NCBI GenBank assembly: GCA_963924565.1 | Contig: OZ004610.1 | Span: 14,446,001 to 14,510,000, forward strand | Source: Ascidiella aspersa | Lineage: Eukaryota | Length of the DNA stretch: 64,000 nucleotides | Reading direction: 5' to 3' | Shown here: one piece after another, positions 34,101-58,100 of the stretch | Layout: each line of letters starts with the position of its first letter | Position numbering within the stretch: position 1 is the first letter of the stretch | Position numbers and translations under genes: made by a program | Notes under the pieces: generated by a model | Database searches by the model: none | What the model was told of the DNA's origin: nothing | The model's input: the letters and a program-made list of their open reading frames with translations, nothing else

Positions 34101-37100
34101 CGCGATATGTCATGAATATTAATATCGGTTTTTGCCGAATTAAACCCTTACTCCCCAACAAATTTATAGCAAGCGAGGCATCATTGGAAAGGTGAGATCA
34201 ATGTCTATGCAATGTGTTTGGTTTTATGGTGGGATGAAAGTTATTTGTGCCTATTGTGGTCGGATGTTTTTTGGGTGAAAAATCGCGATATCGGGACTAT
34301 TAATAGATTAATATGAAATTTTTAAAACTTTGAAATTTTTTAAATTTTTTTGTTCTTTGGCAAACTACGCCTCTAAAAATAAACGTGTGAAAGTTTCGTT
34401 CGATTGTGATTTTTAATAAGGGTACTAGAGACTTTCAAAAATTATCGCGATATGTCATGAATATTAATATCGGTTTTTGCCGAATTAAACCCTTACTCCC
34501 CTACAAATTTATAGCAAGCGAGGCATCATTGGAAAGGTTTACTCCTGCGCTACTTAAAAAAATGAGTTTCAACTTGGGATGAAATTTTTAATTTATTTTT
34601 TATGGCGAATATTAATATTGAATATTAATATTTTTTCGAATATTATTTTTTTTTTTCAAAATCTAAGAAACATAGTCCATTCTCAAGACGGTGGTAAAAT
34701 TTTTTTTCGAAAAAAATATACGTAATTAAGTTTATTTTGACGTTGAAATAATCTGCCAGAAATTATTTGCTGACTAGCTTTTGGTACGCTCACCCGTATC
34801 TCATTTCGCTGGATGGTGCTGGTTGCGAACGAAGGTGGCATGGCTGACGCTTTCCGTACCGCGTCCTGGCCGCCGTGGTGCCGCTTCTCCGCCCCAGGTA
34901 GTTCCCCGTCGGTGCCGGTGGGCGCGGGCAGGTCGGCCAGTTGGCGTCTAATCTTGAGATTAACTACTTCGCCGGCGTGCTGCAGCAGACCGATGGCCTC
35001 GTTAAGGGTCTTGGCTCGCAGCGGTGTGCTGTTGATGGAGAGGATCTTGTCTCCCACGTGGATTGCCCCGGTTCTGTTGCGAAGGAAAAATAGAGTGTTG
35101 AGCCTGCGAGGTTTATTTTTGTTTTTACCATTGAATTAGATAAAGGGTATAGATTAGTGTTTCTTAAATTTTTTTTCATACCCGAAACTTTTGGGTATAT
35201 ACCTGTATTTCTCTTGAATTTCTTGCGGAAGTTTTTATTACATATGCCCAAGTTGCATCAAAAATACTTCAAGTACTGTATGTACACTGAGTTAAGCGTT
35301 AAAGCAGTACTCCTCAACCTTTTTGTCCGTGGCATACCAATTTTTTTTCAATTTTTAATAACTTCGTATACCTCACAAGTCACAAATAGCAATGTTTAAT
35401 TGTGCACAGGAGGTAAAAAAAAAACTGATAATTAATTAATTGTTTGTTAAAGTGATTATAGTAGTCTCGAACTGGGCACAAGAAACTACGCATGCAAAAG
35501 TGCAAAAAACGTCAAAATTGAAGTTGATTTAATGTCTAGCTTGTTGTTGCATTGTTTCGGCAAGTTGGACATAACGTGGTGTTAGCTTTTTGGCGAGTAA
35601 TAACCGCACAACAGGTCCGGTTAAAAGTTTACAAATATGCCAATTGCTGTCTCTGTTGTGACTTCCACTAACACAGAACTAAGCTGTATACCCTTCGTAT
35701 ACCCTTCTCCAGCTGTATACCCTAGTTTTGATCTGGTATACACTTGGGTATACAGTTTACCCGGTTGAATAGCGCACTGCGTTAGAGAAAGTAAAAATGT
35801 AAAAAAAAAATGACCATTGTTGTTTTTACATTGGGATAACTGTTGATAGATGATGACCACTATTTGTCCTTTTGACTGTGCAGTCCAATCCGATTACACC
35901 AAGTTTGCTTATCTTTTAGTGTATATTTACGTTTTTAATTATATTTTGTGTTTTTGATATTTAAACGGTTGGCATGTACTTATTTTTAATTATTATTATT
36001 ATTAGGTTGAATTCTGAACTGAGTCGCCAATTGTAAACTTTTGTGATTTGAATGTTTATTTAAAAACATCCCAGTAATTTGTCAATTTTAATGTTTTCCG
36101 TTTAAATGTAAAAAAAATCGAAAGTCATTAATTTTTATACGATTTAGCACATCTGTCGAAATTATTTTCAGCGAGAAGAATAGCTTACACACATAAGACC
36201 TCATTTGCCGTGTTTGAAAAGTTTCTTTCTTGACATAAAATACACGTATAGCAGGGATGGCTCGCTTAAATCACCTGGAAGCCAGCCCACCCGGGGTAAG
36301 TCCGGAAATGACGATGGGGTCGAATTTTTCATCAGTCCCCGATATGGTGATCCCCAACGGACCCCCGTACCGCTTCAACTCGACAGTGTATGTAATGGCG
36401 CCGCTGGTGTCAGCATCCTCTGCAATGAAAAATGAATTATTTAGGCAAATTTTTAAAAACTGTAGTTGGTCAGAAGTCTGGTTTAGGTAACAAAAAAATG
36501 ATCGTGTAAAGTTCGGTAATAATTTATAATAATTGCGTTTATTCATTGTAGTGGCAACTGCCAAAGCCCATATTTTATATGTCAGAAATAAGTAAACTGA
36601 GTTTTTTATGGCGATATTTTAAACTTTCTTTAAATCAACAACTAAAATGAAACTTTCAGACGTCGAAGGGTAAAAATATTTACCATTTTTATATATTTAA
36701 AAAATACTGCTTTATTTTGATTTTGTCCAATAACCAATTATAAGATTTATGACGTTCTACCTACGTCATCCGCAGTTTTTATGACGATTCAAAAACGAAC
36801 CAACCTCGATTTGGTCGAAGCCCTACAACTTAGTTTTTAAGAAAGGGTTTTAAACTGGGGTCTAATAAACCCTCGAGGGTAGAATTGGTGACTGGAATGC
36901 AATTAGAAATGTGAATAAATGCACGAATCCGAAATTTGTACTAAACAAAACATATTCAACTGTTTCAACCATCAATAAGACGCAGCATACGCCAAAGAAA
37001 AAAAAACGCACCAGAATTCTCCTCGTCCTTAACGATCTTGAGGCGTACGACGTCTTCAGCGCTGGCGAGGAGGGCGTGTGCGTCATCGGCGCTGCATCCG

Positions 37101-40100
37101 TCCAACCTGACCCCGTCGATGCTGACCAGTCGGTCGCCGGCCTCCAGCGTTCCGGTCCGGTGAGCAACCGAGCCCCGCTTCACCTCGGCGATCATGAGGG
37201 CGTCCTCGTTGTGCAGACCTGCCACCATACGAGTTGCTACACTTTTATCGTGTATAGCTGTTTGTCATAAACTGTGTGTTGCGACACAACATTGCACCCT
37301 AAACAATGCTGTGCCGCGTAGCTTTTGTTATTTGGGAAGCTAACCTATTTATACCGCAAACACGCATACAAGACTTGAAAACACGCATACAAACACTTGC
37401 TTTTAGAAAACTTATAATAATAAATTATCCATCTATTTGCTTTCTATATAGTATGAAATAATTGTCAAGTTATAAAATTGTTGTTTTGTAACAACGGGGC
37501 AGCGAATGCAATTTTTTTATTTTTTCACTGTTCCGCATGCTAACAAGTCTGATAACCACTGATGTATAGCATAGTATAAATTTGACAGAAACTTCCTTTG
37601 GACCAAAAAAATTACAACATGCTACATGCCACCGCAATGGTTAAAGTATAAACAATGGAAACGAGTGAAAAAGGAAATTTCTTGGTTGGGCAATATGACA
37701 TAAATGTTTTTCAATCTTAAGATGTATTTTAAAAAAAAAATTAGCTAATGGATGCGATTCCAGAGCTTTTGAAGTCAAATGTATGGATATTATTTAACAA
37801 AAAAGTGTCGCACGTCAAATCAAAATATTTCAAAATCAGTCTACCTGTTTATGAGCAAAGCTATTAAATTTTCTTAATATTTCCTTAAAATGAAAAGCCA
37901 TGATACTGAGAATATTTGTAATTTTTAAGCAAGGGAATATTTAGTAGTACGTCCGCTTACCGCTGACCACAATGCCCAGATCGACACCCCTCCTCTTAGC
38001 AAGCTTGGCGTGGAAAGTCCCGCTACTGGGAACGACCGACTCCGCAACGTCGAACTCCAGCTCGAGAACCACCTGTCAATCAAATCGCTGCCATCATTCA
38101 AGTGATTGCTAGTGGCATTACACAATGCTTGGATGACATGCATTAGTGTGATTTATTAATACTTTATTTACGTATGTTTTATTGACGATAAACAGTGCTA
38201 TTTATTTAATTAGGTTTCTTTGTTTGCCTTACCTCGGAGTTATGACAGAGGTTTTTCAAAAAATAATATATATTACGTTCTTGTTTCGTAGGAAGATTAG
38301 GTCTAGTCCGGGTAACGTCAAATGCTATCTAGTTTAAAATTACTTTTATAATTAAAGTTATGTAAACCTATGGTATTGAAGTTTCTACCCTTTTTTTAAA
38401 AAATATTAGAGCCCGTTTAAGATTTAAAAAAAGGAAACAAAATCTGAAGTATTAAAAAGAAAACAAAAAGCGATCGCAGATGCACAGCGTAGCAAAAGAA
38501 TTTTAGAAAATCGATTTCCGCATTCCACAAGCTCGTTAACGGCGACAAAACAACACTCGACTGGCGAAAGCGAACAAACTGACCTGTCCAGAACAATAGG
38601 CGTCACTCAGCATGAGACTGGCGTCATCCATAGAACATTCCTCGCACCCATATCCGTTGATCGACACGATACGGTCGCCGGCCTGAATCATTCCGCACCT
38701 AGAAAGGCAGGGGGTTAAACCACACGAAACTCACGTAAAAATATTTTCTACCGCCTTTAAACAAACAATATCAATGTTACAAATTTAGTTATTATAGCCA
38801 CTTTGTGCTGAATAATGCATTTGGCCGCTGGAATCGCCGTTCGGATCGACTATCAGCCGACTCAGTATCCCTGAAGGGATAGGACTTGTGAATTTCGTAG
38901 CCTCCGTTTTCTCAGCGCTACGTGATCTTTTTGTGTGCGATTTTGTTTGTATTGCGTTATATTGCGCCGCCATTCGTCGGGTGGATACCGAGAGAATCGG
39001 ACGTATTTTGAGCACAGTTTGCAATCTTGGGGTTAGAAAAAACCTGTAGACTAATGCTAACACTTGGTATAAATGTGTGTTTGCCTTACACTGATTGTCG
39101 TACTGGCTACTAAACGTATTGCTTAAGAAGTTAAAGTCAATTCTTATTCTTAACAACTACTTTGTAGATCGTGTCCCGAACTGGTCTGCGACAATCAGGA
39201 TTTACATTTACAGGTTAGAATTAGTTAATGATGCAGTTAGGCTTGGGTTTCGGGTTGGGTAAAAGGTTTATTACGACCGTATAGATCCTATACCGACTGG
39301 TTTATTTCCATTCACACCTTTAACCGACTATCGGGTTATTAGTCCGTTTTTGGTCTTATTTCGACCGGTGATTTATTCAATCGATAAGGTTATCCCAATT
39401 TCGTTCAATGCTGGAGTCCCTGGAATGCACCGGGGCTTCAATAACATAATCCCTAAGTAAAAATACTGTGTATTTATCTCAAATTATCTAAGAGTACACG
39501 AAGCAGAATAATCAAATTCGTTTTGAAAATATTCTCGGCTCAGTTCCTGGCACGAACCTGTCGGCTGCGCTTTCCGGTTCGATATAGGCGATTACCGGCG
39601 ATCCGATCTCGGTGGCGAACACGCTTCCCTGCAGCTGGATGCCGAATGTTCCAGAAGCAGATGATGACGTCAGCGGGTCGCACGCGTCGTCCAAGGTCAT
39701 GAGGTGAACTTCGTTGAGCTCCGTATGCACAACCTGGTTGCCGCTGAGGTAGTCGGTGGAGGCGAGCGACACTGGAAGTTGATGAAGCGTGTTATGGCTT
39801 TCAAATGATGCATTCGATTGTTACGTCATTTCGGCAGGCTTGTTTTGTCTATTGAGTTAAGTTTTAAGCGATTTGAACGTTTATACCCGTTGTAAAGACT
39901 GCTTAACTTACTAAGTGAGTGTAGCTCAAGCGTCTGCACCAAGCGCGAAGCACAAAGCTTACAGATAATATAGATTTTTAAAGTAAAAAAGCAAAAAATA
40001 AAGCAAGCGTAGTACAAAATTGAAACGACCACAAACTACCACCGGTTTTAAAATTTAGCAATTAATTTTTAACAGTACGATTGCGAATGAAAACAATTGG

Positions 40101-43100
40101 AGATGTTCACTTGATTGCACAAATAATGTAAATTAAATACAAATCACCCATTCAAAATTGCTACACAAAAGCTATGAAGTGAATAAAAAAAATTAAATAA
40201 TCACACTAAGATTGAATTAGGGAATCTGTGCTACAAATTCGGTATGATTAGTTGCTAAGTGCACCACTACAAGCAAGCGGGTTGGACAGCTCGCGCCGTT
40301 ATTTCGCCAAATAATGCCCAATCTAGGAGCGGTGCAGCTGCAAGATTTGCAAGCGCATAGTTTGCAGCCGAAAGCGCTACACTACTGATGTTCTTACAAA
40401 ATGCACTGCTGCGCAAAGTTCCGTAGCGGCCCAAAAACTCTCCTCGTTCGTGCGGCAAGTCCGGGCCCAAGTAAACTGCAGAGCAGAGAAAATTTGCTGA
40501 TAAAGCGCGCCAATTTGAATTAAATTGTAGTGCCCGTTTTATGCGAGGGTAATTTAAACAAACAATTATACGACCAAGAGTCGCCAACTCTAACAGTGCT
40601 TTCAAAAATTTATCACTAAAATTTTATTTTAAACATTTCAGGTTAAATTATATTTTAATGCATGTTTTAGGCGTGGTCAATTTAAACAAACAATTCTACG
40701 AGCAAGAATCACAAACTGTGGCGGATATTTAAAAAATGCACTTGAAATTTGTTGCTAAACTTAGAAGTAGTTTAAACAGTCGACAGGTGTAAGGAAAACA
40801 TGGATAGGCCCTTCTGTAAAGTTTCGTTGGGTTTAGGTAATTAGGCGTGTAATGAACTGGTTCGAACCCAGGAGGAACCTCATCAATCGCGTTGCACGGT
40901 TTGCCAAAAAAATTTTAAACCTAGACTTTAAAAGGGGAGTGACACAAAAAGGCAGTTCGCTGAAAAGTTGGATAGTAAACGGTGGATATGAAACAAGGCA
41001 CGAAGAACCAGCCTGTACAACGTTTGCAAGAAATGATTTGCTATTTTACAGTGTCCGCAAATTTAATGAAAAGTAATATTATTCACCTTATTTATGTTTT
41101 TACATAAACAAATAGTAATTGTAGAACATAATTTTTTGGGGGGTAAAAAAGTTGCAACAATTAGATAAGCCTACTATTTTCATACTTCAATGAGTAACTA
41201 CAAAGGATCATACTTAAAAATAAATCCAAAGGAATAGTAATTTGTTTCTTGTCCAATTCATTCAATAGCAGCAGCAAAGTTACCAACACGCCGCATTTTA
41301 AACATGGAAATCGTAATTTGTACGGCAAGACTCGACGAAAACATTGTGGATAACTGTAGCTGTTTTATCCAACGCTAGGTGTGAAAATATGTATCAGGTT
41401 ACGGGTTTGGTTTTGTTGCGCGCTGCCGAGGTGTGAAGTGATTGTTTGACAACAAAGGGGAAGACCAGGAACAAGTAGTAACCAAAAACGCTGATCGGAA
41501 AAACCTTCATGTTTTAAAAAGGTAGCGTGTCTGCCCTAAGAGCGGTGATTTTAAAGGCGACCGTTAATATATACTTACTGTAGAAATATAAACAGGTGAT
41601 TATTTTTATTTTTTGAATCTTTAAACATCAGATCAATAAAGTAGCTTCGGAATATTATTTACAGCATAAAGAAGAACATTTTCAAGAAAACTGTCATAAC
41701 TTTTCCGGGTTTCTAGATAGGCAAACTTGGAAGCTTGAATGATTGTAGCTACAATTGTCGTGACTTGTAAAAGCAACCTTCTCGTTTGTGATGCTAGCGC
41801 CACACTACAAGCCTAGGCCACGGTGTGCTGTCAAAACGGACAAACGGCCCAGCAATTACGCAACACAGGAAAAAGAGCAACCTGTGGTATTGAGACGACA
41901 AGAAAAAACAGAACCTGGCTTGTCAATCGACAGAAACAACACTAAACACAGAGTGGCAAACATACAGTGACTCGCGTCGATTAGAGTTCTAGGATAGGTC
42001 TACCGGTGGAAGCCAGAATGAGAAGGAACGGCATAATAGATAAGTTTCGTTTTAAACGTTGTTTTCAGAAAAATGTATTTATTATAAATTCAGCTACAAA
42101 TTCGCGAGCTAAAATAGATAGTGGATTCGATTTTCGTTGGCAGTGCTTGTTATATATGTTATGCAAATCGCTGGGGTAGAAGTGCACAGCGTGATCCGCT
42201 TCTGCTCTCGCATTTTTTGTGCTGTTAAAGTTTTGTTTTGTTTTCAGACAATTGCGATATAATTTTAATAACTCCTTTTTGGCCGTCGAAAAGAGGGGAG
42301 AGAGAAAGAACAAATGCCACTGCTGCGCCCACTCGCGGCGTTCCTGATCACGGCCCTTATCGGCATTCGTCTGCCGACATCGCAATCCGCCCAGACCTCG
42401 CTGTTCCTCGCCTACAACGCGTCCGACGGGAGCCTGACGGGCGTCGACAACTGCACGTGCAGCTTCCTGGACCTGGATTGTACCGTCTTACCCTTCTGCA
42501 CCTGCGTCAGTCAAACGCTTGCCGAGCTGACTGCGGCTACGGAAGCGGCGAGCACCGCCAACGCTGTAAGCTGGTGGAACACGCGCCAAGTGCTGGTCTG
42601 CTGTGAAAATGCCACCAACACCGAGCTTACGCGCAGTACGGTCGCTCAGCTGGTCGATTTCTCCTACACGCAGGACCTGTCGTTTCGCGAGTGCCACCAG
42701 CTGCTGCCCAGTGACCAGCGCGAGGTCTACACTGTGTACGGACTACGAGAGTTAAGCGCACGGACCGCGGACAACGTTGCTTTTCCGAGCAAAGCCTTCG
42801 ACCTTGAAGACCCGGACGGTGACCTGACTGACGACTCGCGCCTCTACCGCGATCACCACCTTGCCGTGGTTAGCAGGAATATAGTGGACGGAGAGCGGGA
42901 TCTAAAAGCGGTAAGCTTTATCCACGAGCAGAACGACGAAGCGTTGCCGTCCCTGGTGCAAACTGCTATTGAGAGGAGTCCGAGCTCTATTCGGTCCAAG
43001 TCCGACGGGACGTTCATGTGGACGCCTATTTATAGCGACTTGATCGTGTAAATTCCATTTTGAACGTGATTGCGTGAAGTGTCTTTCTTTTTTTAAACTT

Positions 43101-46100
43101 CAGTGTTACTTTCCCTTCCATGACAAAAACATGCCAGTGCGATATGCTTGTTTTTATGCTTTGGCGTTTGTAAGTGCTCGCATGTTCGAAATATACTGTG
43201 AATAAACGCAAATACAATGCAATAAGCCTCCTATTCAAACAATGTTAACTCTTTTCTCGCTTAGTAGTTGGTGGATGAAACCACCAAACAGAAACTATAC
43301 AGCGGCTCAAGTGATGTGCAGTGCAAACTACGAGAAAATGTCGACAATGGAATTGCCTCGCATATATCGTGCCCTGTATCAACATGTGGACATAATACGC
43401 TGTTCGCTAAGGCAAAAGCAACGCTCTTATGCCGAATACCCGGCATACCACGAATAATTGAACAACATGAAAGTTATACCGTTATAATTCTACCAATTCC
43501 CATGAGTATCTCGTATTGTTTTAACGGTAAAATAAATGGCACAAATCTTTGCATAGCGCCGATAAACTTTCAAAACTATCGTTTTCTTTTACCTACTTTT
43601 TCGCAAATAAGCCATGTGAAAATACCAAAGCTAGAAAAATATCAGAAATGTTCAGTGAATATAGATAGTGTCATATTTGTTGGGCAAAAAACAAAACAAT
43701 ACCGTCGTGTAGTGAAATGAAATAAAATCACTGAACGAAATATATATTGCAACTAACAAAGAGCGGTCAACAAACAAATGAAGCGTTTTATGAGGACTCA
43801 AGCCATAAAGCTGAAATTAGAATAATATAAACTTCGAAATAAAACTCAGTTCGGAATAAGACCAACCAAAATAAGACTAATACCTAATAGTCGTAGTAAC
43901 GCCTAAAACTAAATAAGACCTAAACTCATCAGAATAAGACCTAAATGGCCAGAGTAAGGCTCATGCAACCTTTTTACCTAACCAAGAATCTCACAACTAC
44001 AACTTCACCAATAATTCCCATGAGAATTTTAACACTAGCCCAATTTCCAACCCCACACATACCCCGTACCCCTAACTTGGATTTATTATTTTGTTGGTCT
44101 TGATGCTATGTTATGATATATTATTCTGATTTAAATATTGTTGCTTTGTATGTCTTATAGTGCGTTCCCGTTCATACTTCGGAGGTTCCCTTCCTACTCT
44201 TCGACAGTACTGATTAAGTATTGATTGTTTGTTCCCAACACACGAAAACACCGCGTGAACAAATAGGTGAGGAACGGTGCAGATTACAGGAAAATTCAGA
44301 CGGGGCTGTTTACCGACAGCCTGAAACATCACGGCTCGTTGCGCAGGGAACGTAGGTAGGTACCCCCATCAACAGGAGGTGGGGCGGTTTCAGTTGCAAT
44401 TACGGAGTTAAAGCAATGCTTAAGGGTGTGAAGCTCAGTCGTTACAGCTTTCAGTTTGCTATACTTTGTACGAGTGAGGCTCAGTGATTGTGAGCAGCAG
44501 TTCTTTAAATGCGCCGCAGGTTTTTGTTGACAAGATTTTGGAAAAGTTTTTCTCTTGAGTTATATGCAACACTATCGTCTGATACAATAAAAAAATAGAT
44601 ACGTTAGATGTAGACGTTTCAGCAAGTATTAATCAATAATATTTAGGCACTACTTTTCGAAAAAGGGTATCGACAATCTACTCGGCAGATCAGTAGTTTT
44701 GAATTATCTGAATTAGGTGTAATATTTAAGCCAAGTTTTCAAGATCAGTGTAATATTTAGGCCTATTTAAGATGAGTTTCACATGAAAGCCACAAATATT
44801 CTAATGTCAAATATTTTCGTGTCGTACTAAGCTTTTGCGTTTCTTTTATCCAGCCATATTTCATCAAAAGGAGCACATGTCAGTGGTGAAACCCTGCAAT
44901 GTAGTCGCAGCGGCGATAATGATCGCGGCTCTGCGCCTTCACGACAGCGCGTTAGTGGCGGAGGGCGCCCAGACCTCGCTGTTTTTCGCCTGGAACGACA
45001 ATCGCAGCGTTATGGGCGTGCGCAACTGCACATGCGGCGAACTGGACCTGCACTGCGCCTTCGTACCTGGCTTTTGCACATGCGTCAACATTACATTGGA
45101 CGAGGTGGCGACGGTGGCCGAACGCGCCAGGTCCAACGGGACAGTAAGCTGGTGGAACGACAGGGAAGTTGTGATCTGCTGTGAAGGAGCGCAGACTACA
45201 AACGTCCTGGAACAAGTGCTCGTGCAGCTTGTCGACTTTTCCTTCTGCGAGGAACTCAAGTTCTACGAGTGTCACAACCTTACACCGAGTGACGAGCAAG
45301 CGGCCTACGCGGTGTACGGACTTCGAGAACTAAGCGCCCGAACTGTTACGAACGTCGAGCATCCGAAAAAAGCCTTCGACCTTGAAGACCCGGATGGCGA
45401 CTTGACCGACGACTCGCGCCTCTACCGCGATCACCACGTGGCCGTGGTTAGCAGGAATATAGTGGACGGAGAGCGGGATCTAAAAGCAATTAGCTTTATC
45501 CACGAGCAGAGCGACGAAGCGTTGCCGTCTCTGGTGCAGGCTGCTATTGAGAGGAGTCCGAGCTCTATTCGGTCCAAGTCCGACGGGACGTTCATGTGGA
45601 CGCCAATTTATAGCGACCCTATACGATAGATTTTTGTTGGCTTATGGCGTACAAAACTATAGCTGTGTGGTCTTTATTTTTGCATTTTGCTTTCGACTTT
45701 ACAGTTGAAATCGTATGGTGTTGTGCAGCTGCGGCAGTGTTATGTTGCGCTAATATTAATGTTGTAAATGTATTTATTTTTATTTTCGTTGTGATGCTCG
45801 CCAATCATATCAACCAAAAACTGCATGGATAACACACGTGTACATAAAAAAAAATGTGGAATCAAGGTGGCGCAAAGACTGAAGTCTCCGTGTAAGCGCG
45901 TTTATGTATTGTATCCACATGTTGACATAATTCACTATGAGCATAAAGACGATCGATTGTTGGACGTCAAACGACGATGGCTAAGAATTAAGATATTACA
46001 TCAACAAATCTGTACAAGATTATTAAATCAAGCAAATTTGAGAGGTTAAAAAAGTTTTTCCCGTAGAATACTGCGACAGAATTTGAAACAACAATATTAT

Positions 46101-49100
46101 CACTACACTTTAATTAAAAAAATTGAACTATGCCAAAGTGACAAAAAGGAAAAATATCATAAAAACCAACATTACAAGGGTTCTAATATGGTGTTCTACT
46201 CTACTAGTAATCCACCAGGTAAGCAAAATATACAAAATATTTTAAAAGATTGCGCTTTAAATATTGAATATTTTGCGTCTCCTAAGTTCACTCGCCAAAA
46301 ACGTAAAATCAGCCAACTCTTCATTCCAAAACAAACGTATAGTTTTCCGTTAAGAGAGGCGGGACAATAGTACGTAACAAGTGGGAAACAATAACCACTG
46401 TACTTCACTTTGTTGCGAGCACGTCACCAATTGCGAGTGTAAAGCATTCGCTCGCGCGAATTCACTCGCTTAGTTGAAAAGAAGAGGTCTTCAACAGTTT
46501 CGATAGCTTGGCGCAGAGCTTCGAGCGCACACGTCCGTCCTTGTGGTGGCGGTTAATAGGTGGTCTTATTTAACAAAATCAGCAGTTTTGTACTGTTTAC
46601 TAGTCGTTATTATATAGGAGATCTGCGTTTAAAGCGGCCTTTACACATTGGAGTGGGCATCCGGACTGGCAAGGCAAGAAAAGCAAGCAGGTATATCAAA
46701 GAAGGCATGGCGCTTACAGCTGGTTTTAAGGTGGTTTGGCAGCAAGTTAGTGGCAACGAGTGTACAGTCCTTAATCAGTCTTTACACATATAGATTGTTG
46801 CCGTTCGCTGTCAGTCGAGCGCAAAGCGACAAGGGGTTGGGCCTCGAAAATTTCAACCACAGGCGCTTTAAGGCACATATAATCCAACGCGACACGACCC
46901 AACTGGCGTGAATGGCTCGATGAAGGAAAGCGGCCGTCGCGGAAGTGGATTAGTCGAGTGGTTATGGAGGTCGCGAGGTGCTTGGCGTGCAAGGGCAAGC
47001 CGGAGAGGTGACAGGGACAATGGAATCGCTGGCCTGCTGCTCGAAAGCACAAGGGCCGCCTTCATATGCCGTTTGTTTTCGACCGCAAAGCACACAGGAC
47101 GCGCTTCCACTTCGGAGGGACGATTGATCCCAAGGCAAGGCCGTCAGATATGCCCATTGCCCAGACGCATTGGCGCATCTCGCTTGAAAAGCCAGGGGTC
47201 GCGAAACGGACAGAAAGATTTGCGTTTGGTGAGAAGCCTCGGTGCAGCTTGAATAGCTAGTGATCGATATTCGAAATCAATAGGAACATGGTGTGTTTTG
47301 TTATGTGTTTTTAGTAAGGTCAAGGTCGTATGGTGCTTTTGGTTAGGAAACCAGCAGGCAAACCAGGCAAAAGCAAAGCAATCACCTTTCGGGCAAAGTT
47401 AGACAGTTTAGTATTACGTGAAACTGCATAATATTTGAGGTTATCCGGTGGTTTAGTTTTGTTTTTACATTTGAATGATGGAGTTTACAGTCCTTATAAC
47501 TACCATATCGAGAAGAGGCTAAACAACAGGTTTATTTACTTTTTGAAGTGCTAGATACAGTGATTCCCAAACTGTGTGCCGCGGCACACTAGTGTGCGTC
47601 GAAAGATTGTCAAGTGTGCCGCGACACTTTTTGTAATTTTGGAAAATAAGTTATTTGTACTGCCAATGTGCATACACGACACGTTACCATTTTCGACCTA
47701 AATACGCTCTATCCATTACAAATTACTAATATTGAGACATTTACATATAGTTTGTCGTGTGTTAAGGACAATCTTAAAACTACTCTATGTTGTTCTGTTA
47801 AGAGGGTGTCGCGAAATAGTTAATAATGTTTTAGTGTGCCGCAAGCTAAAAAAAAGTTTAAGAGCCTCTGTGTTAGAAGATGTTGGTAACGAAAAGGTAC
47901 ATTGTCTTCAAGACCAGTTGGGCCAATTTTAACAAGAAATAGTAGAAAGGTTATCATCGGCGTCTAATGTAAATATAATAAGTTATTTGCAAGACGACGA
48001 ACAACAGACGTTTCACACGACTTTCAAAACGCCAGCCTGGCCATTTTGAATGGATGTTATAGCTGGCCTTCAGGGCCGCAATCTGCTTCCAGGTGTAAAG
48101 CCCAGAACAAGTGATCCGTGGTGTCGCGAACAGACGTGTTGTTTGCTTTCGGCATTTGGGGAGCAGGGGTAGGCGGAACAGTCGCACCTACACACGTAAA
48201 CATTCGACAAAAAGCGGAACGAAGGCAGAGCGGGGAGTGGCGGCAAAATAAAAGGCCACCGTAAGGTTGCGCGGCATAGCGGCTTTACTTATATGCGACC
48301 GCGGACTGCTAAACCCAATACTCATTTTCGGGTGAGTGTGAAACAGGTGCAGGCCGTTATGGGACTGGGAGCTTTGTCAGGTCAGGAAAGTATGGTTTTG
48401 AAATAAGCTAGGCACGACACGACCGACACGTCTTAGATTTGGCGCTCGGTTTTAAAAGTAGCTTCGCTAAACTCGCTAACTGGAAGACAAATCAGTTCTG
48501 TTTCTTTAGTTGTAGTTTTGTTAGCCAAATCGGTGCAGCTCTATACGGTGTGTAACAATTTTGCAAACGTAAATACAATTTTAAAGATAACAACATTTTT
48601 TTAGAAATTTAAAGCTCAAAGAGGTACGTTAGAACCTGTATCTTACATTTACCAGGGAAGGACAGAAAATCAAATTGTTGGTAGAAAAACAGCGCTGGTC
48701 AAGACCTTAACTTTATTAATGTATTATAAAGTAGCTCAGACACAACTGCAAGGTTCTACCTTGATCCAGCAACATCAGTTTAATTCCAGTTGCAAAAAAA
48801 AATTATTTATTGATTTATTTCGGTTGCAAAATTAACATAGCATCTCTCAATATGCTTCTGTTTTAACCAGATGCAGCGAGCCGCCTGTAGGTTTTTGGCA
48901 GCGACAGAAGCGAGAAGCCCTCTTCGTCTTATCGCGCTGTGCTGTCTGTCGCTTGTCGCACATTCCGGGGTCGTCCTGCTCAGCGACACGCCGACGCTGG
49001 GTCTGGACCGCTGCACCTGTGGCGAAAACTTTACGGCAGAGGACTGCAACGCCAGGGTTGATGAGCTAAAGGTTCGCGGCTGCGAATGCACGCGCTTGAG

Positions 49101-52100
49101 CGAGGTAGAAGTCAAACAAGCTGCGGAAAACGCGAGTGCGCGCAACGCGACGACTTGGGAGGATCGGACTGGCGATACGCGCGTGTGTTGCTTCGGACTG
49201 CTAAATGCGAGCCGCCTGCTGCGAAACGCGCTCGACTTTGGCTACGTGCGCCGCTTAACGCTTGACAATTGCGGGCGGACGATCGGCGGCGGCGCGGATA
49301 GAGTGGTGACGCTCTTCGGGTTGAAGAAGTTGGCGCTTTACGAAGGCGACCGCAACCGCAGCATCGACTTCGTCGCAAACGACCTCACCGACCTCTCGGC
49401 CACTTACAGACGCCATCACGTGGCGTTCGTGGCGCCGCGGGCGGTGCAAGCGATGCGGGCGTCGCGCGGAAGGCCCTGGAAGATCTGGAGCTTCGTGGCG
49501 TCGGCCGATTGCGCGCCGCACAGCGACGTTATCAGGACTGCGCTGAACCGCGCGCCGCGAGTGATACGGTCTGGACCGAATGACACTTTCATGGCGACGA
49601 CCATTTATGTTGATAATTAATTAATTAGCGACGACGCCCGATGGGTGGGGAAACGCCGTTTTTTGTCGCTGTGGCGCGCTGGTAAGCGACACGCTTCTAC
49701 TACAGCAAAGCAATGGCAATTTGAGAAACCAGAAAGTTGAACAGGAAAAATTTGAGCAAAAAACACTAAATCAATTAATTTGTGCAAATTGCTTTTCTAT
49801 CTATCACTTGCTGCCTGTGGCCCTAACTCAAACAATTCGCCTCTAATGTTCCCGATCGGATTAGGAAACACGTCACATGCTTTACCATATTTATTTAACT
49901 GTCCGACGATTGCATTTATATGCTATAAATATAAAAAATAAAAAGTGTTAGAAAAAAAAATCGGCGCAAACCATGCTTGTATTTCGTACTGAAAAGCAGA
50001 TATAGCATTCTGTCAAATAGGTTTAGACTGAAGGTGAAGTGTTTGATAACAAAGGAGTGGCGCTGATAAATTGATCGAAGCAGCTCGGCATTAATGGCCT
50101 TGTCAAGGGTAGGGTAGGTAAAGATAGATTGTTTTTGTAGATCAAGGGGTTTACGGATGGAAGCCTGTTTCGAGGTTTGGCCGATTTTAAAATAGTTCTG
50201 CTCGGCCGATAACAAACATTTCCCACTATACACATATAGGCTTCAAGGGAATTGGACTTGACATGGTTTCCCAAATTTTGTCTAGATTTCAACAGAATGA
50301 CGCCATACCGTTGAAATCGAATAAGTCAGTAAAAGCAAATCTATACAAGTCCCATAAAGGCGGAATCTAAAAACGGGGTTCGGGCCAAGCCTATGAAAGG
50401 AATTGTGATGATTTCGGTGATTATGCAGTGTAAACAGCGCAGAATAGTCTATAATAAGGTTCATTTTCTACATTCGTTCAAACGTTCTAAACCAGGTTTC
50501 CACCCACACTGGAGGATTTGGTTTCATATCACGTTCTATAACTTTGAAACGGGAAATCAAAATCCACTGGTGAATGAAAAAAGGTTAATAACTCAACAAA
50601 TACGAATTCTAAAGGCGTATAGTTTCAACAATAATTATCTCTCTAACAGTTACGAATGGTTTACAAAGGTTTTTGGAACACAAATCACCAATATTTAGCA
50701 TAGATTTACGAACAGTATGCTGTTAGCGTTGGATGTCCAGTTATTTTACGTATGTACAACTACGATTGTATTTAGTAATAAGCACACTTTAAGAAAATAA
50801 AAAACGGGTCGTAAGGTAAAAACATCTACTCAAACTACGTTATACATGTAGAAACATGGAAAACGTGTAACGGCAATTCGCAAAAAAGAAACTTACTGGC
50901 ACTGGCGCTGTACTTGTTCCGGGGCATACGCTTACGGTTCCAGCGGTTGCTGCCGCGGCCGAAGCTGGTGAGGGTGCCCACCCCCTGCTGCTGGCGCGCC
51001 ACTCGTTGTGAGTTTAGCGCCGTCATCGACTGAGCGCTCGTTATGAACGGAGTGAAGCGACCCTCTGCAAAACACAGCAAATTTGGTGATTTTTAACATT
51101 TAACATAATTAAATAATGATCTAAATAATATTCTTCTCCATGTAGTTTTTTCATATCAAGGCGGCATCAGACTCGTAAACCCTCCCGGGTTATTCGGTGT
51201 CACCTTGCTAAAGCGCATGTTCAATTTCTCGCGAACTTTGATCAATATTACATATGAAAAATGCGTATGGCAAAATAAATACTTTGAATAGTTGAACATC
51301 GTTGGAGCGTGCTTTTTGACGTTTTCAAATGTGATAACAAAACTAGCAACCGACCAGGAGGGCTGTTAATTTTTGCACACATCAAATGTCGGAATAAAGC
51401 AAAAAGAGCTGCTTGAGTAACGTTTCTGTGCGAAGCACAATTGTCATGAGTCCGTGCACGCACTTATGTTTACTCCTAAAGTGAAAACGAAATGGACAGT
51501 AGCGCGTAAGATTTTATCGACGTTCAAATATTTGCTGTCTAGCCTTATCGCGCGGTATATTAGAAAAATTTGTTATCCACAATACAAAAAAATGGTAAAT
51601 GCGCGAACTATAGTTGCAATTCTATGACGTACTTTTTATTTAAACAAGTTTAACAACATGTTCCGAAAACAGTTTTATTGTTTAAATATATAAGACAAAG
51701 CCTATAAGAGCGAGAGAATATTTTCGTTAAATGTACAACAATTATTGCTAGAAATGTTTTGTTTACATTTAGGAAAAAAATGTTTAATATAGAAATTGGT
51801 TTGTAATGGTGCAGAAGATAATAATACTGTCGTTACTTGTCGTACAATTTACAGGCTTACATTCTACAAATAACTAAAAAAAATCTGGAGTCGATTTTTT
51901 TGGCCTTTTGAGATTTTTTTTTGTAATGTTGGTTATTGTTGCATCTAATCTTTTACCACGTACGCAAAGTGCCCAAATTATCAAAGGCAAAAGTGCCTAA
52001 ATAGCCTGTCTCCGCGAAAAGACCGTTTTGGTTCTTTACTTTTTTGTCTGCTGCTGACGTCAATATCAAGAGAGGCGTCGTGTGGCGGACAAGCGTAGCG

Positions 52101-55100
52101 TGCTCCAGCCGCCCATTGGACAAAACTAAACGCCCTTGTTGCTGCGGTTTTAACAGTAAGTATTTCTCACTTAATCGAGAAACGGTTGTTTTTCTAGGTA
52201 ACGGGATTAAATGTTTCGGCATCAGGAAACTTACGCCGACATCGTGCTACTAACCAGACAATGGAATAGTTTGATTGAGGTTTGCCAGTGCTCCGCAACC
52301 GGTGTGCCGTGGCACACTGATGTGCCGCGAGACCATGCCAGGTGTGCCGCGACGTTCCTGGAGGTGTGTTACTTGCGTTTTTAAGTGAACTTATTAATCA
52401 GTAGAATTAACGCAAAAACTGGATATCGCATCATGGCAATTATTTTAAACTTATGCTAAAATCCAGGTGTAATATTATGGCCTTTCCATAGTCGTTTAAA
52501 CAGTTTTTAAAACCTATGTTACCTTCTTTTACCGGAAATTAAGTATTAAAATAGGTTTTTTGACTCACTCAACTTCCAGGAACTACACCAGGAGTACAGA
52601 CTTACGATAAATATTTTCAAACATTACGCGAAAGTGTAAAAGGGAGATTAACCATGCGCTCGAAACCTATGAAACATCATTGTAAATACATTATTGGCAG
52701 TATGTGACTGTAAAATTAATAATTAGTTTTGGCAGCGGTTTCGAAAAATAAATTAAGCAACAAAATACAAAGCACCAAGGTCAGGTTTCATTTTTCGAAT
52801 GCTATTAAAAGCCCTCTGCTCTGATCAGGTATTGCAAGGGGGTACAATTTTCAGAACTTTGACTGGGCTAGAAATTTTAGGAAGTCTGCAAAACCGCAAA
52901 ATAAGAAATGAAAGGAATGTAATACATAAAATTTTCGGCGCCTTCAGCGCGTTTCATCATAGATCAAGTCATGCCTATTTAGATTGACTGCATACGACAT
53001 TTCGTGATATTGTCATTTGTCAATCGACATACAGTTCGTAGGTGCGCCGCCAAATTGTTTTAACTCTGTTGGTGTGCCGCAAGTGAAAAAAGGTTGCGGA
53101 GCACTGGTTAAGGCGAAGGTTTAATGGTCTTTTGACAGAGTTTTTCCGAAAATTACTCCGAGAATCAACAAAATAAAAATCGAAAATGGAAACTGGCATA
53201 AAGCATAAGCCACGTAAACCCGGAACACTCACGTCCGTAGGGCTTGGGACTGGTGATGGCCAGGTGGGACACCGGCAGTATCTCGAGCTTCACTTGGTCA
53301 GAAGAGGTCTGCAGCATGTCGGACGCCTCGCGCACACTCACAGACCCGTTGCCCATGGAAACGTTGTCGATGGAAAGGATCTGGTCGCCAATGTGCAGAG
53401 CTCCGCATCTACGCGCATTGAGAAGGAATGAAGTCAATGCGGCAAAGTACTCGCATTCTTTTGTAATGACCTTATTTCAATGCACTTGTCTGGGATATTT
53501 TAATCACTTAATTGACTGTGGAGCTTTTATAACATTCTTCAAATTGCTTCGATGACACCATTACTTCTTGTACCCTAAGGTCAGCAAGTTTAGATATATG
53601 ATATATTTCACGACAATAACTCAACGTAACCGTATATTTAGATTAAATTAAAATACAAAAATGCCTTGATTTGTTTTTAACTAAAAACTTTAAATAGGAT
53701 CTACTAGATGGCGAGTTGCAGATTTAATTTAAAGAGCAAATATTTCAAAATACCGGGCAATTTCTCATCATCAACTTGGTGTGTGCTTACCAGTAGTTTA
53801 GGGCCAGCCACTGAATAGTCAAAAAATGCCTGTCAATTACGTCTAGTTATTGGCAAACATTGCGCGGTCAGATTACGGTAACTGGACGCCGCGCACCGCT
53901 GGCCAAGTTTACGACTGGATTGTCCAGTGTTTGAAATTGCGAGATTTAACAACGATCTAGTTACCGAAAAATGTTTCTTGCACTCGCGCGAGTGTTGACG
54001 AAACGGCCTGAATGTATATAACCCGGCACCGCGTACAATACAAACTTTTTACTTTCCCAGTCAAGACGGGGAGCCGCGACTAATCCCGTGATCAAATAAA
54101 GCAATTCGTCTTCATACTTCACCCTAGCATAGGTCCGACATCGACAAAAGGACAACGTCTGATGCTAATCGCTCAACGTCGACCGCGACAAGGCAGCTTA
54201 TCAACGAGGCAAAGATTACGAAGAACCACAACCCATTACCCGAAAGCGTTAAACATGACTGGGGCAGTTTATTTTTACGGTTACTAAGAAAAAAATGAAC
54301 AAAACAATGATTTTGAAGGTTTTTCTGTATTTGGAGTAATTTGTCAAAGAATAGAGGTGCGATTGCAGCAGAACAAAGTATATTTCACACATTTTTGTTC
54401 GAACTCATTTTTGGTCATTTTACGGTGCGTTTACGGTATAAAATTGCGATTTAATGAGCACGATTTGTATACTTTCAAAACCGCAAAACCATTAACCTTT
54501 ACGCCAGATTTCGATTTGCCTAAAATTTGTTATTTGTACCGACAATATCAGTCGAATTCGACCGCAGCCCACCCTGGAGCTCCTCCTAAATGTACACGTG
54601 TTGTCTATACTTGTGCCAATAGCAAAATAAAGTTCCATTCACCTGTCCGAAATGCTGGCGGGCTTGACGCGCTCGATACAGATCACTGGTTTCTTGCGGT
54701 GGGTCGACTTGGTTAGGGTAATCCCCAGCTCGGCGCCGGGCGTCTTGGAAACTTCGACCAGCAGAGGGCCAGTGGCGTTGGCGACCGCGTCTGTTTCGCA
54801 ACAAAACACCAATATTAAACTTCATTCATCAAATTAGGCCAGGGGTTCTTAAACTGGGGTCCATGAACCCCTTGGGGGTCGGTCCGTGAACTAGTTTAAG
54901 GTTTAATTGAAATATTAGTGTATTATTTAAGGAGTAATCAATTTTTCGTATTTTGACTCTACTTCATTTTCACATTTTTTGAACCATAATCACCATATTC
55001 CTAAAGTCCATTTGTATTGTGACGTCAATTTATGACGTCCCTTTTGAAATTTTTTTGCCTAACGTGCTTCACGCGAAATAAAAAATTTAGGGGTTCGCGG

Positions 55101-58100
55101 TAAAAAAAATTGAAGAATCCCAGAGTTGGGCGCATATTAGAAACATATATTATAGAAAAATACACTTCGAAAATAAATGACGATATCAGTTGTTCTGGAT
55201 TTACAAAAAAAGCGAAACCACAACGCCAATAATGAGTGTGAGTAATTGCTTTGGCGCCGGCAGTTAGTACGGAAACCGTTGTGCAAAAAGGCCGAGTCAC
55301 GCAATTATCGAATGAAAAAAATTCCTTCAACTTCCAGGCGGCAATTTAAAGCTTCGTCCAAATCAAGTTAAGCGGTAAAAATAATCGGTTTAAATCTGAC
55401 ATGGTGCAATTAACGCTACGGCCACATTTGTAGATGTGAAATTTCTCCTGAATAAAGACTTAGTGATATGACGTAACTACTCGCAGATAATGACGTCAGT
55501 TGTCAACGATAGACTTCATAAAATGAACAGTTTGTACGTCTTAAATATAAAATTTTTAAGTAAAAATCGATTTCAAGAGGTAAATGCACTAGTACAGGCC
55601 ACAGGGCCTTCTTAAAAACAAAAAAACTTTGTAACTTTAAAAAAAACAACTAACTTTTGACGTACGCCGATGGAAGCGACAACACTAAAAGTACATCTCT
55701 AAACATTCTACAAAATATATAGAGTTATTTTAAAATAACAATTCAAATCGCCTAGCCCAGAAAAGTTCTTTCGATATTTTTTAAGAGTTTATTAGGCTTT
55801 TATGTTTAAGGGTTTGTTCAGTTGGGCGCCTATCCTTAAAGTGCGATTGTCCGTTTCCAAGTGTCATTTCAGAAAAAAATCAAAAAAAAAAATAAAACTC
55901 ACCCATGACCGACACGTCGTACTCGATGGTGAAGTTAACGTCGTCGCCCAACGAGCGGATTGCCACCAGAGCTTCGTCCAGCATCAAGTGCTGTAGCTTG
56001 ATGCCGCCCGCCGATAAGATGCGATCGCCAGTCTTCAGGCTGCCTTCCCTGCGCGTGCATATGTGTAAACAAAGGCCTTTCGAGACGCTAATAACGGCCT
56101 TCGGGGTCCTTCGAATTAGATTAGGTTAATCCGCTGCGATTCGGTTGCTAACGACCGGACTTGCGTTTGAGTCTGGAATTTTATCGGCGCGGCGTGGCTT
56201 AAGGATACACCACCGCTGACAGGAAAGATGACAGGGGTGTTTTGTGCGCGGTTCGTTAAGCACGATTGTAAACATGCAAAGACATTACCGACGCTTTCTA
56301 TGTGTGTTTTTAGAATAAAGTCGACAAAACATTTTGAGTATATCTGTGCTTTAAATTCTGCAAATCTCACAATTCATCAAGTTAAGTGGGCTGGCCTTTA
56401 TCCAAACCTGTCGCCTCTTAAGATGTCCTTTTTTCAATGTCGGTCGTCTTTCTATTTTGTTGCGAAAGAGTAATAAAAAAGGCAAGATGATAGGCTTGAA
56501 TGTACACCACGAATAACACACAGGGACGCGAAAATGCGCACCAACAAAAGCATTTTGTTGTTGGAAACGGTTGAGGAGAAAGAACGGTAAACTTTGTTCC
56601 ACGATAACATTTAATCTCCATCAAACCACATAATGCGCACTTAACTTACGCCGATGGCTGTAGGTCACTATAGTGTTCCGTAGGAGAACGTCAGGTGTTC
56701 CACAACAAATTTATTCTTTTGACTAATGTCCCATGTAATGCCGATCGAAATCCATTGGTGTGTTATGGCCATCACCAGTTTAAATGTTCGTGAGTTGCTT
56801 CATTTATTGATATGTAATAACAAAACTCAGTAATCGAAACGTTTTTTTGAAGATGATGTCGATTTACTTTAGGCTTTAACATTTATTTCAAGCTACATCA
56901 CAGATCTGTACATTTAGTGTACCTAAGACTTAAAAAGGTTAAAAAAATGAGAAAAAACTGTTGTTGTGAAGTTTAACGAAATGTATTATACTAAACTTTC
57001 GTTTGGTGTTCGGCAAAATTATTTATAAGTTTATCACGGCCTAAAAAAGCTTGAAAAACACTGCTATAGGAGACCATACAACCGCAACATTTGGGATTCA
57101 TGTATAAAGCAATTTTGGATAGTTTTACGAATTCTGATGGGCTTACGGAAGCTAATTTTGTGGAGCAAGAAAAGTCACATAGAAAGGCATAAATGTTTAC
57201 TATTCTTAACAAACCGATTTTTTATTTTACCCAGCGGGGTATAAACAATGAAAGCAAGACCTAGCACAGTAAACGCCAGACTTAACCCTTTAAGCATTTA
57301 AATCTGTAGTACGAATAAAATTCGCCTAGTGAACTTTACGTCTAAATCCGTCTTTCGGGAGAAAGTTACTGTGTTTGCCGAGCCCAGTCAGTCATGGATT
57401 GTCCATGAGACGTATAGTACATCAAAACTTGGCGGTACAGCGAAATAGCACACAAAGGAGCAAAATTAAAAAAAACCTGCCAACAGGCTGTATAAAATAC
57501 TTCTAAAGCTTGACAGCCTTCGGCTAATTGCCAATTTACGGCGGATCCGCTGCAAAGCGCGCATGTAACGTGTGTCGGGCCCCAAGGGACAATAGGAAGG
57601 GTGACCTTCGAAAGTGCGAGAGAGCGGATCAATATGGGGTTTGCTTCCGTCAGCAACGCGACGGTGATCGCAACTGACGCAAAACGTTTTACCGGTTTCA
57701 ACTGATGGAATCGACTAATTTACCACACAACAAGCACAAGTGATGTGACAACCTAACTTTAACATGTAAAGTTTTGCGTCACATGTTGTATGCTATCGGA
57801 AGCATTTCCAAGTTACATTTGTTTTAAATAATATTACTTTATCGACCTGCGGATTAATGGCGCATAGTTTAAAAAAAGTAAAGACACAAATAAAATTGTC
57901 GAGGTTATGGCTATGTGTGCTCCTATTTAGATGGAAGGCCGATCGCCAGTTTAGTTGTTCTTTACTTAAACCTCGCTAATTCCCCATCAACAGAGTTTAA
58001 TAGTGGTTAATTACGGAATGTTTTACTCCCTTGGCTATAGTGGTCTAGCAACAGTTAAAAACGACAAAATCCGACGATCCCATAAAAACAACCGATGTAC

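What the first reader, a model, noticed from the sequence alone, without database searches (positions are those of the whole stretch)
42314..49620. Three-gene cluster of secreted EPCIP/C21orf62-like proteins hidden antisense in one GRIP intron
Seen: three ~250-aa single-coding-exon ORFs with signal peptides, shared Cys spacing, several N-x-S/T sequons and a C-terminal FMxTxIY. All are on +, inside GRIP intron 40476-50896, by far the largest resolved GRIP intron. Knowledge: the motifs match my recollection of EPCIP/C21orf62, a poorly characterised exosomal polycystin-1-interacting protein that I know as single-copy in mammals. Inference: this is a lineage-specific expansion of an invertebrate EPCIP family, possibly a set of ligands or accessory subunits for polycystin-type receptors. 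It is the best candidate for an undescribed system in the window.
Basis: partly seen in the sequence, partly recalled or inferred. Interest (0 to 1): 0.85.

Follow-up and report, generated by a model that had tools for sequence, protein, structure and literature searches.

The report
Three nested EPCIP-family secreted protein genes
Three neighbouring intron-less genes sitting backwards inside an intron of a GRIP-like scaffold gene encode small secreted cysteine-rich proteins of the EPCIP/C21orf62 family, the partner of the kidney-disease protein polycystin-1, a family that the literature calls vertebrate-only but that also forms a small gene family in sea squirts.

Summary
Three + strand ORFs are mutual paralogues: A 42314-43051, B 44877-45629, C 48871-49620. 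A/B are 67% identical and A/C 33%. Each has one N-terminal hydrophobic segment, eight invariant Cys, 3-6 N-x-S/T sequons and a C-terminal FMxTxIY. They lie between the PDZ3 and PDZ4 exons of a minus-strand seven-PDZ, GRIP-like gene.

The EPCIP call is supported indirectly. The window proteins do not hit Pfam PF15137 themselves. Their profile finds 22 proteins (best E 9e-45), and every named one is from an ascidian (Clavelina, Ciona, Styela). Six of the 22 pass Pfam's curated threshold for PF15137. A protein-language-model search puts protein B next to three C21orf62 clusters.

A vs B dN/dS is 0.42 outside a 249-bp gene-conversion tract and 0.10 inside it. The genome holds a fourth paralogue with introns, and at least three loci with PKD and REJ domains. 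AlphaFold models are confident (pLDDT 88-90) but match no solved structure (best Z 3.1).

Verdict: real new members of a known family. The result corrects a published "vertebrate-only" statement and is moderately interesting.

The parts
42314..43051 (+). Gene A: single-exon CDS, 245 aa, EPCIP-family secreted protein (stop included)
   Evidence: ORF; paralogy; homologues; AF2 pLDDT 88.4
44877..45629 (+). Gene B: single-exon CDS, 250 aa from the first ATG (the mechanical ORF starts at TTG 44835)
   Evidence: Atlas top hits are PF15137 clusters
48871..49620 (+). Gene C: single-exon CDS, 249 aa, divergent paralogue (33% identity to A)
   Evidence: AF2 of the mature part gives pLDDT 90.1
42791..43039 (+). 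Gene A copy of the 249-bp tract homogenised with gene B (14 differences; dS 0.21 against 0.94 outside). It ends 9 nt before the stop codon.
45369..45617 (+). Gene B copy of the homogenised tract
   Evidence: constant offset of 2578 nt
42233..42247 (+). Pyrimidine tract plus AG, 66 nt upstream of A's ATG. Candidate 3' splice or trans-splice acceptor (inferred).
   Evidence: sequence
44839..44853 (+). Pyrimidine tract plus AG, 23 nt upstream of B's ATG. Candidate acceptor (inferred).
   Evidence: sequence
48856..48870 (+). Pyrimidine tract plus AG abutting C's ATG. Candidate acceptor (inferred).
   Evidence: sequence
43201..43206 (+). AATAAA 150 nt after A's stop. Candidate poly(A) signal.
46022..46027 (+). 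ATTAAA about 390 nt after B's stop. Candidate poly(A) signal (weak).
49937..49942 (+). AATAAA about 315 nt after C's stop. Candidate poly(A) signal.
40476..50896 (-). Host intron of the minus-strand seven-PDZ (GRIP-like) gene, with GT..AG ends. It lies in the PDZ3-PDZ4 linker.

Best explanation
A, B and C are three functional, tandemly duplicated, single-coding-exon genes of the EPCIP (C21orf62/CU062, Pfam PF15137) family. They are nested on the opposite strand inside the PDZ3-PDZ4 linker intron of a GRIP-like gene in what is most likely a tunicate genome. Each encodes a protein of about 220 aa after removal of the signal peptide: soluble, N-glycosylated, with four predicted disulfides and a single compact alpha/beta domain. 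Shown here: the ORFs, their paralogy, purifying selection, ectopic gene conversion between A and B, homology to a tunicate-wide family whose members meet Pfam's EPCIP threshold, and the presence of PKD+REJ (polycystin-1-like) receptor genes in the same genome. Inferred from the human protein (PMC10487028), which is secreted into the ER, self-oligomerises and binds the PKD-repeat array of the polycystin-1 ectodomain: these proteins act as lumenal or extracellular partners that bind the Ig-like PKD repeats of polycystin-1-like receptors, with different paralogues possibly serving different receptors. The nesting in GRIP is probably positional and not functional.
For: Paralogy and conserved Cys, sequon and C-terminal motifs. 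A profile of the three finds 22 proteins, 18 of them at E<=1e-10. All named ones are ascidian. Six pass the PF15137 gathering score, at 29.9-40.8 bits against a cut-off of 27, and their alignments are collinear over most of the model. The database precomputes PF15137 for this group. In the Atlas, the three nearest named clusters to B are all PF15137/C21orf62, sharing 178-187 of 256 features. dN/dS for A-B is 0.42 in the non-converted part and 0.10 in the tract; for A-C and B-C it is 0.33-0.61 by method, with dS saturated. GC3 is about 0.7. Only an N-terminal hydrophobic segment is present. AF2 gives pLDDT 88.4 and 90.1 for A and C, with the same order of secondary-structure elements. Like the human gene, the whole ORF lies in one exon, with an acceptor-like AG just upstream (PMC10487028 section 4.1). 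There are REJ hits at six loci, three of them with PKD domains beside them.
Against: None of A, B, C or the exons of paralogue D hits PF15137 directly, even at E<=10. The Pfam model run on the whole genome finds only a 40-residue stretch broken by stops. I could not obtain a vertebrate sequence, so there is no direct profile-profile or model-model comparison with human C21orf62. The complex prediction with a PKD-repeat exon gave no answer. Binding to polycystins is known for only one human protein, from one laboratory.
Confidence: 0.72

Rival explanations
1. They are true EPCIP homologues, but their function has diverged from polycystin binding. For example, they could be matrix, tunic, immune or gamete-recognition proteins that use the same fold on other targets.
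For: Sequence identity to the Pfam-passing relatives is only 20-33%, and there is no direct Pfam hit. Tunicates hold several deep subfamilies. The N-terminal half diverges quickly between A and B (dN 0.40). The complex test gave no answer.
Against: The Cys framework and C-terminal motif are conserved across the whole family. PKD+REJ receptors are present in several copies. No alternative partner is indicated by any result.
Confidence: 0.2
2. This is a lineage-specific secreted, cysteine-capped, LRR-like family that resembles EPCIP only by convergence or shared composition.
For: Second-tier Atlas hits are LRR families (0.80-0.84). Weak structural rows recur for LRR proteins such as RPP1, FBXL3, COI1, BT_1240 and Mex67 (Z 2.2-3.1). 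L-x-x-L-x-L-x-x-C-like motifs appear in the alignment.
Against: Six relatives exceed a curated family threshold with collinear, near full-length alignments. No Pfam LRR model hits any member. The LRR Z-scores are far below significance.
Confidence: 0.05
3. The three ORFs are decaying or unexpressed retrocopies of the intron-bearing paralogue D and have no function.
For: Their coding regions lack introns while D has at least two. No expression data could be obtained.
Against: All three frames are intact after dS > 0.9-2. dN/dS is 0.1-0.6. They have no poly(A) tails or flanking direct repeats. A/B and C are each closer to other species' genes than to D. Human EPCIP is also single-coding-exon (PMC10487028).
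Confidence: 0.03

Closest known systems
Human EPCIP / C21orf62 / CU062 (Q9NYP8; Pfam PF15137 ECPIP, formerly DUF4571), Lea et al. 2023, PMC10487028
   Same: Length of about 220-250 aa. Signal peptide and no TM segment. Several N-glycosylation sequons. A single domain filling the whole protein. The entire ORF in one exon, preceded by a splice acceptor. Family link through Pfam-passing intermediates and language-model features.
   Different: Three tandem copies plus a fourth with introns, instead of a single gene. No direct HMM hit. Found in a non-vertebrate chordate, where the paper says the domain is absent. Nested in a GRIP-like intron, whereas the human gene lies at 21q22.11 (PMC10487028). 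Oligomerisation and PC1 binding are untested.
Uncharacterised ascidian proteins: Clavelina lepadiformis XP_076804627 / CAK8698465, CAK8698464 and CAK8676756; Ciona intestinalis XP_078486799; Styela clava XP_039264417 / XP_039259894
   Same: The same family (E 1e-13 to 1e-45 to the window profile), the same Cys framework and C-terminal motif, and several paralogues per genome. In Clavelina two members have consecutive accessions on one contig, which suggests tandem linkage.
Small extracellular LRR proteins with a cysteine-rich N-terminal cap
   Same: Alternating short strands and helices, L-x-x-L-x-L-x-x-C-like motifs and an N-terminal Cys cluster. Weak structural and language-model resemblance.
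   Different: No Pfam LRR hit. Best Z is 3.1, so the fold is not shown to be LRR.

Membership tests
EPCIP / C21orf62 (Pfam PF15137) | Direct match of the protein to the PF15137 HMM at or above the gathering score (27 bits) | tested here: not met
   No PF15137 hit for A, B, C or the D exons at E<=10. The Pfam HMM run on the own genome finds only a stop-broken 20.6-bit fragment elsewhere.
EPCIP / C21orf62 (Pfam PF15137) | Homology to proteins that do meet the PF15137 threshold (transitive membership) | tested here: met
   The window profile hits P0001, P0002, P0003, P0006, P0009 and P0013 at E 9e-45 to 8e-19. These score 29.9-40.8 bits on PF15137 and carry a precomputed PF15137 label.
EPCIP / C21orf62 (Pfam PF15137) | Direct resemblance to vertebrate C21orf62 by an independent method | tested here: met
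   Atlas language-model features for B: ranks 1-3 of the named clusters are PF15137 / C21orf62 homologues, 0.94-0.93, sharing 178-187 of 256 features. This is soft evidence: recognition was 1936, below the 2300 mark, and protein A gave no usable hit.
EPCIP / C21orf62 (Pfam PF15137) | Signal peptide, no transmembrane segment, about 220 aa, single domain | tested here: met
   The hydropathy maximum occurs only at residues 1-20 (A, B) or 18-38 (C). AF2 gives one compact domain with a low-confidence N-terminus. SignalP itself is not available.
EPCIP / C21orf62 (Pfam PF15137) | Multiple N-glycosylation sites (the human protein has five, four conserved) | tested here: met
   3, 5 and 6 sequons. The N-C-[ST]-C sequon is near-universal in the family alignment. 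Actual glycosylation is not testable here.
EPCIP / C21orf62 (Pfam PF15137) | Whole ORF in a single exon | tested here: met
   A, B and C are uninterrupted. Paralogue D is split into three coding exons.
EPCIP / C21orf62 (Pfam PF15137) | Binds PKD repeats of the polycystin-1 ectodomain; self-oligomerises | tested here: inconclusive
   Complex prediction of mature A with a 561-aa PKD-repeat exon of a PKD+REJ gene gave 'no answer', score 0.00. Self-association was not tested.
GRIP (seven-PDZ glutamate-receptor-interacting protein), host gene | Seven PDZ domains arranged 3+3+1 | tested here: met
   Pfam PDZ hits on 5 of 10 minus-strand exon pieces. The remaining halves were recognised by G-x-G-x motifs. 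Orthology to GRIP1/2 itself was not tested.
Leucine-rich repeat proteins | Match to LRR profiles or an LRR solenoid fold | tested here: not met
   No LRR Pfam hit in any of the 25 members. Best structural Z is 3.1 and 2.8.

The most novel reading that the evidence does not exclude
EPCIP is not a vertebrate invention. It dates at least to the common ancestor of tunicates and vertebrates. In tunicates it radiated into several deep subfamilies that pair, paralogue by paralogue, with the expanded set of PKD/REJ polycystin-1-like receptors, for example in sperm-egg or cell-cell recognition. It does so through a disulfide-locked alpha/beta domain with no solved structural analogue. The A/B pair, with a fast-diverging N-terminal half and a conversion-homogenised C-terminal half, would then be a specificity module joined to a constant module.
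Probability: 0.2. Interest if true: 0.65.

Novelty: new member of a known kind. Interest (0 to 1): 0.42.

Why it matters
EPCIP is the only proposed soluble partner of the polycystin-1 ectodomain, and its role is unknown. The single paper on its distribution says it is absent from tunicates and cephalochordates (PMC10487028). A multi-gene EPCIP family in ascidians pushes the origin of the family back to before the tunicate-vertebrate split. It also offers compact, genetically tractable chordates such as Ciona for testing what EPCIP does with polycystin-type receptors. The diverse alignment yields confident structure models of a domain for which no solved analogue was found. The nested, antisense position is a common arrangement and is of little interest in itself.

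Tried and rejected
- Direct Pfam scans of A, B, C and the D exons at E<=1 and E<=10 gave only noise (Sigma70_r4_2, HSF, VEGF_C).
- The search for homologous proteins with C found nothing. With the 25-row profile only 2 of the family were recovered, because of the candidate cap. With the 7-row profile at E<=10 only more unnamed relatives appeared and no vertebrate sequence. No direct hhalign against vertebrate EPCIP was therefore possible.
- Atlas with A gave no usable hit.
- A PDB sequence search with the profile found nothing at E<=10.
- Foldseek against the PDB for both models gave nothing below E 0.17.
- VIA-align wide gave best Z 3.1 and 2.8.
- Complex prediction of mature A with a PKD-repeat exon gave no answer. 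This is evidence neither for nor against binding.
- The weak PF15137 hit on C9 (L005) is broken by stops and was discarded.
- A transposon or retrocopy origin is unlikely: no flanking repeats, tandem repeats or inverted repeats in the intron, and only four family loci in 308 Mb.
- The AU test for an A+B+C clade was not decisive (p 0.33).
- The three exons of paralogue D were examined only one at a time.
Full report
**1. Observation**

The ORF listing finds three long + strand ORFs at the stated places: 42314-43051 (245 aa), 44835-45629 and 48871-49620 (249 aa). The second is a TTG-extended ORF whose first ATG is at 44877, giving 250 aa.

The three align over their whole length, at 67% (A/B) and 33% (A/C) identity. 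There are 56 invariant columns. These include eight cysteines, a D-L-T-D / Y-R-x-H-H block and the C-terminal T-F-M-x-T-x-I-Y. They carry 3, 5 and 6 N-x-S/T sequons.

In each protein the only strongly hydrophobic stretch is N-terminal. That fits a cleaved signal peptide and no membrane anchor. SignalP was not available.

The ORFs are sharp GC islands, at 0.56-0.61 (GC3 0.68-0.74) in an intron of 0.37-0.42. There are no assembly gaps, tandem repeats, flanking direct repeats or inverted repeats in the intron.

**2. Host gene**

The minus strand carries PDZ half-exons on both sides of the cluster. Pfam PDZ hits lie at 59931-60227, 55883-56125 and 53168-53476 upstream, and at 36968-37264 and 34686-35135 downstream. 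The matching N-terminal halves, and a last PDZ at 29184-29420, are recognisable by their G-x-G-x motifs. This gives seven PDZ domains in a 3+3+1 layout, as in GRIP, with the cluster in the PDZ3-PDZ4 linker.

The proposed intron ends have a GTAAGT donor at 50896 and a pyrimidine-rich CAG acceptor at 40476 on the minus strand. The nested antisense arrangement is therefore confirmed. The exact intron limits still need RNA evidence.

**3. Family**

None of the three proteins hits any Pfam family meaningfully, PF15137 included, even at E<=10.

An HMM of the three was searched against 1.84 billion cluster representatives. It finds 22 proteins, 18 at E<=1e-10 and the best at 9e-45. They are 165-275 aa long apart from one 92-aa fragment, and they align from the signal peptide to the C-terminal motif.

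Every hit that carries a name is from an ascidian:
- Clavelina lepadiformis, three distinct clusters
- Ciona intestinalis
- Styela clava

All of them are annotated 'uncharacterized'.

Thirteen of the 22 hits match Pfam PF15137 (ECPIP, 'exosomal polycystin 1 interacting protein') at E<0.1 (which scanned the 25-row alignment including the three window proteins). Six exceed its curated 27-bit threshold: 40.8, 37.1, 35.9, 34.3, 32.7 and 29.9 bits. Their alignments are collinear and cover up to positions 21-217 of the 218-position model. The protein database's own precomputed annotation gives PF15137 for this group.

As a direct test by a different method, the ESM Atlas feature search with protein B returned three PF15137 / C21orf62 clusters as ranks 1-3 of the named clusters. 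Scores were 0.94, 0.93 and 0.93, with 187, 184 and 178 shared features; 170 or more is typical of same-family hits. LRR families came next, at no more than 0.84. Protein A gave no usable hit in the unfiltered mode.

I could not fetch a vertebrate EPCIP sequence with the tools, so no direct profile-profile or model-model comparison was made. I rate family membership at about 0.85.

**4. Family size and history in this genome**

Six-frame searches of the 308-Mb assembly, with the 3-row and then the 25-row profile, find only four loci. These are A, B and C, plus a paralogue D on another chromosome (C1, about 6.19 Mb).

D has the same signal peptide, N-C-T-C motif, C-C motif and W-M-F-T-P-I-Y end, but it is split into three coding exons. 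I examined its exons one at a time and did not join them.

A and B are sister genes (99/99 support). C is closest by score to two unnamed proteins, P0005 and P0008, and not to the A/B-like group. The deep nodes are unresolved, and an AU test does not reject an A+B+C clade (p 0.33).

dS between C and A/B is saturated, above 2. The 'lineage-specific expansion' is therefore clear for A/B only.

In Clavelina two divergent members have consecutive accession numbers on one contig. This suggests that tandem linkage of divergent paralogues is old.

**5. Selection and gene conversion**

| Comparison | dN | dS | dN/dS |
|---|---|---|---|
| A vs B, mature N-terminal part (133 codons) | 0.40 | 0.94 | 0.42 |
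| A vs B, last 83 codons (14 differences) | 0.02 | 0.21 | 0.10 |
| A-C and B-C | 0.86-1.07 | saturated | 0.33-0.61 by method |

High identity starts near A 42791 / B 45369. It stops abruptly 9 nt before the stop codons, at A 43039 / B 45617, after which the 3' flanks cannot be aligned. This is the signature of ectopic gene conversion confined to the coding sequence. It agrees with the other first-stage note on this stretch (s1-805333).

Intact frames under purifying selection argue against dead retrocopies.

**6. Gene structure hints**

These are read from the sequence only. Each ATG is preceded by a pyrimidine tract and an AG. The AG ends at 42247 (66 nt before A's ATG), at 44853 (23 nt before B's) and at 48870 (abutting C's).

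That fits a non-coding 5' exon, as in human C21orf62, whose fourth exon holds the whole ORF (PMC10487028, section 4.1). It also fits spliced-leader trans-splicing.

AATAAA or ATTAAA signals follow the stops at 43201, 46022 and 49937.

**7. Structure**

AlphaFold2 with the family alignment gives confident single-domain models. A has pLDDT 88.4 and pTM 0.83; mature C has 90.1 and 0.87. Both show the same order of strands and helices.

Neither model has a significant match in the PDB. The best Foldseek E-values are 0.17 and 0.5, with TM about 0.15-0.2. VIA-align against 48,161 representative chains gives best Z 3.1 and 2.8, with none at or above 5. The tool notes that models without a clear match usually still reach Z 7-8.

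LRR proteins recur among the weak rows, and also in the second tier of Atlas hits. An LRR-like alpha/beta arrangement with a cysteine-rich cap is therefore a lead, not a result. A missing match does not prove a new fold.

**8. Mechanism**

The only functional data are for human EPCIP/CU062 (PMC10487028; review PMC11781568). It is:
- a 219-aa glycoprotein with a signal peptide and no TM domain
- able to form detergent-resistant oligomers
- a binder of PKD domains 2-17 of polycystin-1
- co-localised with PC1 and PC2 on extracellular vesicles

By homology, the most likely role of A, B and C is as secreted or lumenal partners of PKD-repeat ectodomains.

Candidate receptors exist in this genome. 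REJ-domain hits occur at six loci, and three of them have PKD domains beside the REJ hit: C1 18.89-18.95 Mb, C2 33.74 Mb (-) and C2 33.85-33.87 Mb (+). One of these includes a 561-aa PKD-bearing exon.

A complex prediction of mature A with that exon gave 'no answer'. It counts neither for nor against binding. Binding is thus inferred, not shown; I put it at about 0.35-0.4.

**9. Comparison with the literature and novelty**

Lea et al. [quoted passage not shown] A full-text search found no paper describing non-vertebrate members.

The results here show a multi-gene family in at least three named ascidians and in this genome. Other notes of this scan also treat this genome as a sea squirt; those notes are unchecked leads.

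Automated Pfam annotation already tags several of these proteins. This is therefore an extension of a known family, not a new kind of system. It corrects the stated phylogenetic range, adds a tandem nested trio showing gene conversion, and provides good models of an uncharacterised fold.

**10. Limits**

- There was no direct comparison with a vertebrate sequence or model.
- The organism is inferred from its nearest homologues only.

Noticed in passing
window 22270-22414 (+): Full-length U1 spliceosomal snRNA gene (Rfam RF00003, 79.2 bits, above the gathering score), apparently inside or beside the region downstream of the GRIP-like gene.
   Followed up: no
window 26066-26140 (+): tRNA gene (Rfam RF00005, 41.5 bits).
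   Followed up: no
window 23759-24316 (-): Open frames with several hydrophobic, transporter-like segments (for example 23759-24079). They suggest a separate multi-pass membrane protein gene downstream of the PDZ gene.
   Followed up: no
L004 (G000:C1:6192376-6195624), exons about 743-927, 1457-1797, 2403-2717 (+): Fourth EPCIP-family paralogue (D), with at least two introns. The first intron is filled by a long (CCAA)n-type microsatellite. Its nearest relatives are P0014/P0030 and Clavelina P0011.
   Followed up: partly
G000:C2:33739000-33756000 (-) and G000:C2:33851000-33871000 (+): Two divergently oriented PKD+REJ (polycystin-1-like) genes about 100 kb apart, each with a PKD-bearing exon of about 560-590 aa. 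A third PKD+REJ locus lies at C1:18.89-18.95 Mb, and there are further REJ-only hits at C1:15.51 Mb, C1:32.89 Mb and C3:17.41 Mb.
   Followed up: partly
window 40515-40609 and 40643-40737: A 95-nt direct repeat (76% identity, 128-nt spacing) just inside the 3' end of the host intron. Its meaning is unknown.
   Followed up: no
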